A DNA stretch of 63,049 bases, counting the filler, from Octopus bimaculoides (taxonomy: Eukaryota), in the NCBI RefSeq assembly GCF_001194135.2. It is 3 parts of 3 records of this genome, joined end to end, with 100 filler letters (N's around TTAATTAATTAA, not from the genome) between each part and the next. Parts side by side here need not be neighbours in the genome. Positions count along the whole stretch, not along the records: positions 1 to 16,155 come from NC_068990.1; 2 more parts are not named here. One strand, 5' to 3'. The position numbers and the translations under genes are program-made. The notes beneath the pieces were generated by a model. That model was not told the DNA's origin and searched no databases. It was given only the letters and a program-made list of their open reading frames with translations. Below are positions 1,613 through 1,703 of the stretch, piece after piece. Positions within the stretch are counted from its first letter, which is position 1. Every line of letters begins with the position of its first letter.

Positions 1613-1703
1613 ATGCTGCAGTTATCCCCGAACACGGTGGTATATTTGGATATCCGATCTGATGTTCCAAATATGTCAACGTGTTCTGGGATAACTGTAG
1701 CAT
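1613..1703 (+). ncRNA. Candidate pre-miRNA-like hairpin
   Basis: Arms 1613-1650 and 1666-1703 align without indels: 33 Watson-Crick pairs, 3 G-U pairs, 2 mismatches; 15-nt loop; not inside a recognisable repeat. Confidence 0.5.

What the first reader, a model, noticed from the sequence alone, without database searches (positions are those of the whole stretch)
1613..1703. Pre-miRNA-like hairpin in unique sequence
The 38-nt arms pair without indels (33 Watson-Crick, 3 G-U, 2 mismatches) around a 15-nt loop that can pair further (t-g, a-t, t-a, c-g). Three of the five deviations are G-U pairs on the plus strand but would be A-C mismatches on the minus strand, which points to a plus-strand RNA. 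The size fits a Drosha substrate: an 11-13-bp lower stem plus a 60-65-nt pre-miRNA. There is no TSD and no similarity to other repeats in the window. Coleoid cephalopods are known to have many lineage-specific miRNAs. I do not recognise the mature sequence.
Basis: partly seen in the sequence, partly recalled or inferred. Interest (0 to 1): 0.7.

Follow-up and report, generated by a model that had tools for sequence, protein, structure and literature searches.

The report
Decaying 91-bp DNA palindrome, unproven miRNA
The hairpin is real and by far the strongest fold in this 16-kb piece, but it is most likely an ageing inverted duplication (a miniature transposon relic or a replication template-switch product), and nothing available here shows that it is a microRNA gene.

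Summary
Arms 1613-1650 and 1666-1703 pair without indels (33 Watson-Crick, 3 G-U, 2 mismatches). RNA MFE is -54.8 kcal/mol (z -11) on the plus strand and -45.4 (z -9.4) on the minus strand. It is the most stable 91-nt fold in the piece and has no other copy there.

The miRNA reading is neither shown nor excluded.
- For: single-stranded flanks; a CNNC (CUGC, 1711) 16-18 nt past the predicted 3p Drosha cut.
- Against: no Rfam family (26 bits against a gathering score of 99); a stem longer and more perfect than typical pri-miRNAs; no basal UG or apical UGU in register. The G-U strand bias is not significant (3 of 3 transitions, p about 0.125-0.25).

The setting is non-coding and TE-littered, with a mariner remnant and a LINE tail. 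The arm core reads TG|CAGT...ACTG|TA, like a Tc1/mariner-type miniature element (MADE1-like), but the palindrome runs 6 nt further out, which also fits a template-switch inverted duplication.

Copy number, conservation and small-RNA expression could not be tested, because no eukaryotic genome or read data were reachable. Literature base rates suggest under 1-5% of such hairpins are genuine miRNA genes.

Verdict: a real feature, probably ordinary, of low to moderate interest.

The parts
1613..1650 (+). 5' arm of the palindrome (38 nt)
   Evidence: I1: 38 nt, 87% complementary
1651..1665 (+). Spacer/loop of 15 nt. UAUC (1651-1654) pairs with GAUG (1661-1664), leaving a 6-nt terminal loop CGAUCU and a bulged U1665. 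It overlaps the 8-bp self-complementary GGATATCC at 1648-1655.
1666..1703 (+). 3' arm of the palindrome (38 nt)
1617..1699 (.). Candidate miniature-transposon boundaries: TG | CAGTTATCCC...GGGATAACTG | TA. This would be a 79-bp core (1619-1697) with Tc1/mariner/pogo-style CAGT termini and a TA target duplication carrying one A-to-G change. The implied empty site is ATGC-TA-GCAT.
   Evidence: Read directly from the sequence. The superfamily resemblance comes from memory and was not tested.
1711..1714 (+). CNNC motif (CUGC), 16-18 nt downstream of the predicted 3p Drosha cut if the lower stem is 10-12 bp
   Evidence: baseline frequency 9-12%; none within 40 nt on the minus strand

Best explanation
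It is a 91-bp imperfect DNA palindrome in non-coding, transposon-littered DNA. A sequence and its reverse complement were once placed 15 nt apart. They have since drifted apart by five point substitutions (13% between the arms) and no indels. The most likely origin is a miniature non-autonomous DNA transposon of the Tc1/mariner/pogo kind, reduced to its two terminal inverted repeats plus a few internal bases, built like human MADE1 (2 x 37-bp TIRs + 6 bp). On this reading the 79-bp core CAGT...ACTG inserted at a TA in a palindromic site, ATGC-TA-GCAT. Shown: the structure, its statistical strength, its uniqueness within 16 kb, the absence of coding sequence around it, the presence of DNA-transposon and retrotransposon debris in the piece, and the lack of any Rfam family match. 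Inferred: the transposon origin, the neutral decay, and the absence of an RNA function. If a host transcript reads through it on the plus strand, the RNA would form a roughly 40-bp stem that Drosha/Dicer or ADAR could act on. That makes it raw material for a miRNA rather than a demonstrated gene.
For: Indel-free 38-nt arms with a 15-nt spacer, folding strongly on both strands and as DNA, which is the signature of a DNA-level inverted duplication. The substitution pattern fits neutral decay: 3 transitions and 2 transversions, two of them disrupting pairs, with no significant excess of pair-preserving changes (binomial p about 0.2). The core termini CAGT/ACTG abut TG and TA. The architecture matches MADE1, whose 37-bp TIRs and 6-bp spacer make 'nearly perfect palindromes' (PMC1784062). 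The piece carries a mariner-type DDE_3 remnant at 6165-6446(-) and a LINE ORF2 tail at 12510-12749(-). No Pfam domain lies within 1.6 kb of the hairpin in any frame. No Rfam family matches. In Octopus vulgaris, if the host is an octopus, about 66% of the genome is repeats, Tc1-Mariner is the TIR class with the most families in that paper's table, and MITE families are annotated (PMC13282606).
Against: There is no second copy or partial copy in 16 kb, and genomic copy number could not be measured. The TA duplication is imperfect (TG/TA). The palindrome extends 4 bp beyond it (ATGC/GCAT), which for host flanks has a chance of about 1/256 unless the target site was itself symmetric. Taken at full length, the palindrome has no TSD of any size from 2 to 10 bp. 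The arms resemble no terminus of the mariner remnant in the piece, and no convincing TIR pair was found for that remnant. The TIR resemblance to pogo/Tigger2 comes from memory only and could not be verified. A correctly placed CNNC and a wobble pair in the basal stem are mild points in favour of an RNA role.
Confidence: 0.45

Rival explanations
1. A local inverted duplication made in one step by a replication template-switch mutation. The nascent strand copied about 38 nt from the opposite or its own strand and then resumed, leaving a unique-sequence palindrome with no target-site duplication. It has since decayed neutrally and has no function.
For: The sequence is unique in the piece. There is no TSD for the full 91-bp palindrome, and pairing ends abruptly on both sides. 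The spacer is short. Template switching is documented to create perfect stems in one event, and stems of 30-55 bases were that paper's criterion; more than 6,000 such hairpins arose in the primate lineage (PMC10710096). A second small perfect palindrome (260-285) lies 1.3 kb away, consistent with a locally active process.
Against: The TG|CAGT...ACTG|TA arrangement inside the arms is unexplained by this mechanism; I estimate it at a chance of a few percent. TE-rich genomes usually owe most long short-spacer palindromes to MITEs. No outgroup sequence was available to show the pre-event state.
Confidence: 0.3
2. A genuine, probably young and lineage-specific miRNA gene, whatever the DNA-level origin of the hairpin. 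It would be transcribed on the plus strand, cut by Drosha about 11 bp above the base and then by Dicer. That would yield a duplex of roughly 1624-1645 (5p) and 1672-1694 (3p), which loads into Argonaute.
For: The stem has single-stranded flanks in context. CNNC lies at +16 to +18 for a 10-12 bp lower stem, and only on the plus strand. All three wobbles favour the plus strand, and one lies in the basal stem; wobbles there aid processing (Fang and Bartel, as cited in PMC10710096). Internal mismatches fall inside the predicted duplex, as is usual for miRNA duplexes. Coleoids gained many novel families: 90 novel families in Octopus, 35 of them Octopus-restricted (PMC9699675). Palindromic MITEs and template-switch hairpins are documented sources of miRNAs.
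Against: No Rfam family is at or near threshold. The stem is 38-42 bp and 87% paired, which is longer and more perfect than typical. The predicted pre-miRNA is 67-71 nt. There is no basal UG in register and no 5'-side apical UGU. The G-U bias is not significant. Base rates are low: 164 miRNA genes in a gigabase-scale octopus genome, and at least 18 miRNA genes from more than 6,000 suitable template-switch hairpins, about 0.3%. None of 12 plausible seed-match 8-mers appears in the octopus target tables, though those files are truncated and this is a weak test. No expression or conservation data were available.
Confidence: 0.08
3. A double-stranded RNA element inside a longer host transcript (intron or UTR) that is not a miRNA. 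It would be either a source of heterogeneous endo-siRNAs (hpRNA-like) or a substrate for ADAR A-to-I hyper-editing.
For: A nearly perfect duplex of about 40 bp is a better fit to Dicer/siRNA and ADAR substrates than to Microprocessor (established knowledge). Cephalopod neural tissue shows elevated RNA editing (abstract of PMC9699675).
Against: There is no evidence that the locus is transcribed. No exon or gene was recognised anywhere in the piece. Known hpRNA loci have much longer arms. The host organism was not identified by any tool.
Confidence: 0.1
4. An assembly or sequencing artefact, such as a fold-back chimeric read.
For: The piece contains an assembly gap (N run 3344-3837), so this is a draft-quality region.
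Against: Fold-back artefacts give long, perfect palindromes. This one has short arms with 13% divergence including transversions, and ordinary unique flanks.
Confidence: 0.02

Closest known systems
MADE1 / hsa-mir-548 (human mariner-derived palindromic MITE and the miRNA family that arose from it; PMC1784062)
   Same: Almost the same architecture: two roughly 37-38-nt inverted repeats around a very short spacer, about 80-90 bp in total, non-coding, and folding into a very stable hairpin on either strand. A mariner-type transposase remnant lies in the same piece. The core is flanked by (T)A dinucleotides.
   Different: MADE1 is defined by thousands of copies and by TIR identity to Hsmar1. Here no other copy and no matching autonomous element could be shown. 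The TA duplication is imperfect, and the palindrome runs 6 nt beyond the CAGT termini. No small RNAs are known from it.
Template-switch-generated hairpins that seed de novo miRNAs (PMC10710096)
   Same: A unique-sequence inverted repeat with a short spacer and no TSD. The stem length is within that paper's 30-55-base criterion. Substitutions accumulated after the event, as in 105 of that paper's 111 loci.
   Different: The diagnostic evidence, a parent sequence without the second arm, is not available here. Individual events described there (for example 28 bases) are shorter than these 38-nt arms.
Canonical bilaterian pri-miRNA hairpins (Drosha/DGCR8 substrates; MirGeneDB criteria)
   Same: A roughly three-turn stem with single-stranded flanks, a downstream CNNC in register with an ~11-bp lower stem, a basal-stem wobble, and mismatches within the putative duplex.
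   Different: The stem is 38-42 bp rather than 35 +/- 1, with a small 6-nt terminal loop in the MFE structure. The basal UG and 5'-apical UGU are missing, and no described family matches. No read, conservation or 5'-homogeneity evidence exists.

Membership tests
Animal miRNA gene (MirGeneDB-type criteria) | Hairpin in which the two putative mature arms pair over at least 16 nt | tested here: met
   36 of 38 positions are paired, counting G-U.
Animal miRNA gene (MirGeneDB-type criteria) | Small-RNA reads from both arms with 2-nt 3' overhangs and homogeneous 5' ends | not testable with these tools
   No small-RNA data are reachable. The supplements of PMC9699675 hold no read or precursor sequences (the let-7/miR-1 control was absent).
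Animal miRNA gene (MirGeneDB-type criteria) | Presence in a second species (the criterion Zolotarov et al. used for novel octopus families) | not testable with these tools
   No eukaryotic genome collection is available. The protein-handle routes failed. Metagenome scans gave only chance 18-22-nt matches.
Animal miRNA gene (MirGeneDB-type criteria) | Microprocessor geometry and motifs: stem about 35 bp, single-stranded flanks, basal UG, apical UGU/GUG, downstream CNNC | tested here: inconclusive
   The flanks are single-stranded. CNNC is in register for a 10-12 bp lower stem. The stem is 38-42 bp. UG at -14 appears only for a 15-bp lower stem, which puts CNNC out of register. The loop UGU lies on the 3' side.
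Any described miRNA/RNA family (Rfam 15) | Covariance-model score at or above the family's gathering threshold | tested here: not met
   The best scores are mir-8489 at 26.3 bits (gathering score 99) and mir-101 at 25.5 bits on the minus strand (gathering score 60).
MITE of the Tc1/mariner/pogo superfamily (MADE1-like) | Short non-coding element consisting of terminal inverted repeats | tested here: met
   91 bp (or a 79-bp core), 38-nt inverted arms, and no coding domain in any frame nearby.
MITE of the Tc1/mariner/pogo superfamily (MADE1-like) | TA target-site duplication directly flanking the TIRs | tested here: inconclusive
   The core CAGT...ACTG is flanked by TG on the left and TA on the right. 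The full palindrome is flanked by CC and AA, with no direct repeat of 2-10 bp.
MITE of the Tc1/mariner/pogo superfamily (MADE1-like) | Multiple dispersed copies in the genome | not testable with these tools
   There is no copy elsewhere in the 16-kb piece.
MITE of the Tc1/mariner/pogo superfamily (MADE1-like) | TIRs shared with an autonomous transposase-encoding element | tested here: inconclusive
   The only transposase remnant in the piece (6165-6771, minus strand) has no recognisable TIRs to compare. The resemblance to Tigger2-type TIRs comes from memory only and was not verifiable.
Template-switch (TSM) inverted repeat | Inverted copy of at least 15 nt next to its source, with no TSD | tested here: met
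   38-nt arms 15 nt apart, with no TSD for the full palindrome.
Template-switch (TSM) inverted repeat | Ancestral or outgroup sequence that lacks the second arm | not testable with these tools
   No related genome is available.
Mirtron | Hairpin ends coincide with a GU donor and an AG acceptor, between exons | tested here: not met
   The only GU...AG pair (1621 and 1699-1700) would leave a 5-nt 3' tail, and no exons flank it.

The most novel reading that the evidence does not exclude
The hairpin is a very young, lineage-specific miRNA gene (or proto-miRNA already giving Drosha/Dicer products) caught soon after its birth from a DNA palindrome. It would be transcribed on the plus strand, with the CNNC at 1711 and the basal wobble already favouring Microprocessor. 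That would make it a cephalopod example of miRNA birth from a MITE or a template-switch event.
Probability: 0.07. Interest if true: 0.45.

Novelty: new member of a known kind. Interest (0 to 1): 0.2.

Why it matters
If small-RNA data showed precise processing, this locus would be a clean example of how the large coleoid miRNA expansion obtains raw material. It would show one mutational event making a near-perfect stem that then acquires wobbles and mismatches. As it stands, the finding mainly shows that a striking fold statistic (z -11) and a plausible strand bias do not separate a miRNA gene from an ordinary DNA palindrome. Copy number, an orthologous empty site and read stacks are what decide the question.

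Tried and rejected
1. Rfam 15 at permissive E-value gave only generic sub-threshold hairpin hits, one of them on the wrong strand.
2. I used spurious ORFs through the hairpin as a handle for paralogous or orthologous copies. Both open minus-strand frames found no word-sharing protein among 5.8 billion. The negative is uninformative for the source genome, because none of 10 ORFs of the piece is in the collection.
3. I used the mariner remnant as a handle for orthologous loci and found no candidates.
4. Metagenome scans: the exact 32-mer gave 0 hits. The degenerate 18-mer matching both arms gave 55 single hits. None extends beyond 22 nt or has an inverted partner, and many share one 20-mer, probably from a bacterial gene.
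5. The Zolotarov et al. supplements contain no precursor or mature sequences, since the let-7/miR-1 controls were absent. None of 12 candidate seed-match 8-mers is present, but the files are truncated and the host is unverified.
6. Full-text searches for arm strings and for Tigger2-like TIR strings returned only unrelated primers and viral sequences.
7. The O. vulgaris repeat paper has no consensus library held as text.
8. Organism identification failed: relatives of the LINE tail carry no organism names.
9. The mirtron reading was rejected because the splice-site geometry is wrong and there are no exons.
10. hAT (8-bp), PIF (3-bp) and piggyBac (TTAA) TSDs were checked by eye and are absent.
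11. A possible C2H2 zinc-finger exon at 7298-7636 was not supported by Pfam.
12. Six-frame Pfam scan of 1-3300 gave only low-complexity artefacts.

Full report
**1. The observation**

Arms 1613-1650 and 1666-1703 are 38 nt each and pair without indels. There are 33 Watson-Crick pairs, three G-U pairs (G1618-T1698, G1640-T1676, T1641-G1675) and two mismatches (C1629/T1687, G1637/A1679).

Four further pairs form inside the 15-nt spacer, leaving a 6-nt loop and a bulged U1665. Pairing does not extend outward.

- As plus-strand RNA the 91-mer folds at -54.8 kcal/mol, against -20.1 +/- 3.1 for dinucleotide shuffles (z -11.1).
- The minus strand folds at -45.4 (z -9.4), and single-stranded DNA at -30.9 (z -11.5).
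- In 191 nt of context the stem is kept and its immediate flanks stay unpaired.
- In a sliding 91-nt scan of both strands of the whole piece, the mean is -12.4 +/- 5.6. This site is the minimum, and the runner-up (-38.5) is a GT/GC microsatellite.
- It is the only long inverted repeat outside low-complexity DNA.
- Neither arm has another match in the piece at up to 3 mismatches. A sensitive local search finds nothing above shuffle level.

**2. Surroundings**

The piece is AT-rich (about 34% GC) and full of microsatellites. It has an assembly gap at 3344-3837.

- It carries a mariner-type transposase remnant at 6165-6446 on the minus strand (DDE_3, E 9e-6). By eye its N-terminal region extends to about 6771.
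- It also carries the C-terminal tail of a non-LTR retrotransposon ORF2 at 12510-12749 on the minus strand. That tail has 1,395 relatives, matching at the extreme C-termini of 977-1304-aa proteins that carry RVT_1.
- No Pfam domain is detectable in any of the six frames within 1-3300, apart from low-complexity artefacts.
- I recognised no host exon anywhere in the piece.

The hairpin therefore sits in non-coding sequence among transposon debris.

**3. Is it a miRNA?**

Points in favour:
- The stem has single-stranded flanks.
- A CNNC motif (CUGC, 1711-1714) lies 16-18 nt after the predicted 3p Drosha cut if the lower stem is 10-12 bp. No CNNC lies within 40 nt on the minus strand.
- There is a wobble pair in the basal stem.
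- The two mismatches lie inside the putative duplex.

Points against or neutral:
- CNNC occurs in such a 3-nt window at 9-12% of positions in this sequence.
- In that register there is no UG at -14, and the only loop UGU is on the 3' side.
- The stem is 38-42 bp and 87% paired. Efficient Microprocessor substrates cluster at 35 +/- 1 bp with more irregular stems (established knowledge, Fang and Bartel 2015). The predicted pre-miRNA would be 67-71 nt.
- No Rfam 15 family comes near its threshold: mir-8489 scores 26 bits against 99, and mir-101 scores 25.5 bits on the opposite strand against 60.

Any transition in a perfect palindrome produces G-U on one strand and A-C on the other with equal probability. 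Three of three on the plus strand therefore has p = 0.125, or 0.25 if either strand would have been accepted. If transversions are a third of changes, three or more G-U among five differences has p about 0.2. Two of the five changes break pairs, so there is no sign of selection to keep pairing.

**4. What a DNA palindrome predicts**

Strong folding on both strands and as DNA, indel-free arms and an abrupt end of pairing are what an inverted duplication at the DNA level gives, whether or not any RNA is made. Two known mechanisms produce such objects.

*(a) Miniature inverted-repeat transposons.* Human MADE1 is two 37-bp TIRs around 6 bp, a 'nearly perfect palindrome'. A few copies have become mir-548 genes (PMC1784062). 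Here the inner core reads TG|CAGTTATCCC...GGGATAACTG|TA. That gives CAGT/ACTG termini as in Tc1/pogo-type elements (my own knowledge) and a TA duplication with one transition. The weakness is that the palindrome continues for four more pairs (ATGC/GCAT). On this model those pairs must be host DNA, which implies insertion into a symmetric ATGC-TA-GCAT site. Taken at full length, the palindrome has no TSD.

*(b) Template-switch mutations.* These create a perfect inverted repeat in one replication event, with no TSD and in unique sequence. More than 6,000 suitable hairpins arose this way in primates, of which at least 18 became miRNA genes (PMC10710096). This fits the lack of a TSD and the uniqueness, but it does not explain the TA/CAGT arrangement.

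Each model needs one coincidence of roughly percent-level probability. I favour the transposon relic (0.45 against 0.30) because of the TE-rich context and the mariner remnant in the same piece. The data here do not settle the question.

**5. Base rates**

Zolotarov et al. annotate 164 miRNA genes in O. vulgaris, 94 of them in 90 novel families, and they required presence in a second octopus species (PMC9699675). Set against a gigabase-scale, roughly two-thirds repetitive genome (PMC13282606), the prior that any one strong hairpin is a bona fide miRNA gene is small. The template-switch study gives about 0.3% (at least 18 of more than 6,000). Allowing a several-fold boost for the in-register CNNC and the plus-strand wobbles, I put a genuine miRNA gene at about 0.08. 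I put some other dsRNA role in a host transcript (endo-siRNA source or ADAR substrate) at about 0.10.

**6. What could not be done**

The three decisive tests are genomic copy number, orthologous loci and small-RNA reads. All need eukaryotic genome or read data that none of the available collections holds.

- Protein handles failed, and the source genome is not ORF-indexed.
- Metagenome scans gave only chance matches.
- Paper supplements contain no precursor sequences, and their seed-match tables are truncated.
- Literature string searches were irrelevant.

**7. Verdict**

This is a real and statistically outstanding hairpin. It is best read as a decaying DNA palindrome of ordinary origin, either a miniature-transposon relic or a template-switch duplication. 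It has the shape of miRNA raw material, with no evidence yet of being a gene. In kind it is a new member of a known class. Interest is low to moderate and would rise if read stacks or conservation were found.

Noticed in passing
window 244-300 (core 260-285): A second, smaller hairpin. It has a perfect 11-bp/4-nt-spacer palindrome, CATTCACGATC-ACGC-GATCGTGAATG, inside a longer imperfect stem (60 nt, MFE -26.6, z -3.8). It lies 1.3 kb upstream of the main hairpin and just before the (ATT)n microsatellite.
   Followed up: partly
window 6165-6771, minus strand: A decayed mariner-type transposase: a DDE_3 match at 6165-6446 with the '...HPPYSPEF.P.DF' motif, and an HTH-like N-terminal stretch seen by eye at 6562-6771. 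It has frameshifts and no recognisable terminal inverted repeats.
   Followed up: partly
window 12510-12749, minus strand: The C-terminal tail of a non-LTR retrotransposon ORF2 ('...VVPIIVGAIG...'). It has 1,395 relatives, matching at the C-termini of 977-1304-aa RVT_1-containing proteins. The best identity is only 42-59%, so no close copy is indexed.
   Followed up: yes
window ~9796-9902, plus strand: By eye, a motif resembling the GIY-YIG nuclease of Penelope-like elements ('...SLHFGQKGRCLADRYAEHL'). Pfam did not confirm it.
   Followed up: partly
window 7298-7636, plus strand: A 113-codon open stretch with Cys/His spacing like a C2H2/BED finger ('CKICHDK...CILCDVQFPALSDYNNH'). Pfam gave only sub-threshold hits, so it may be TE-derived or due to chance.
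   Followed up: partly
window 3344-3837: An assembly gap (494 N) flanked by (TA)n. The 270-nt '98-100% inverted repeats' reported there by the repeat finder are artefacts of the N run.
   Followed up: yes
window 2941-3005, 3850-3928, 5096-5166, 8978-9066: Sub-threshold Rfam mir-297 hits (31-43 bits against a gathering score of 90). All fall on (TG)n/(TA)n/(GC-GT)n microsatellites and are low-complexity artefacts, not miRNA genes.
   Followed up: yes
window 340-420, 12937-13005, 14405-14620, 2254-2335: Long trinucleotide and dinucleotide microsatellites: (ATT)n twice, (TAC)n-(TGC)n-(GAT)n-(GAC)n in tandem, and (CT)n. There are also many (CA)n/(CACG)n tracts at 4090-4390, 10170-11130 and 15450-15740.
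   Followed up: no
metagenome loci L004-L055: About two dozen gut and other metagenome contigs share an identical 20-mer with the 3' arm (window 1678-1697). They are probably one conserved bacterial gene matching by chance. They have no inverted partner and no relation to the hairpin.
   Followed up: partly
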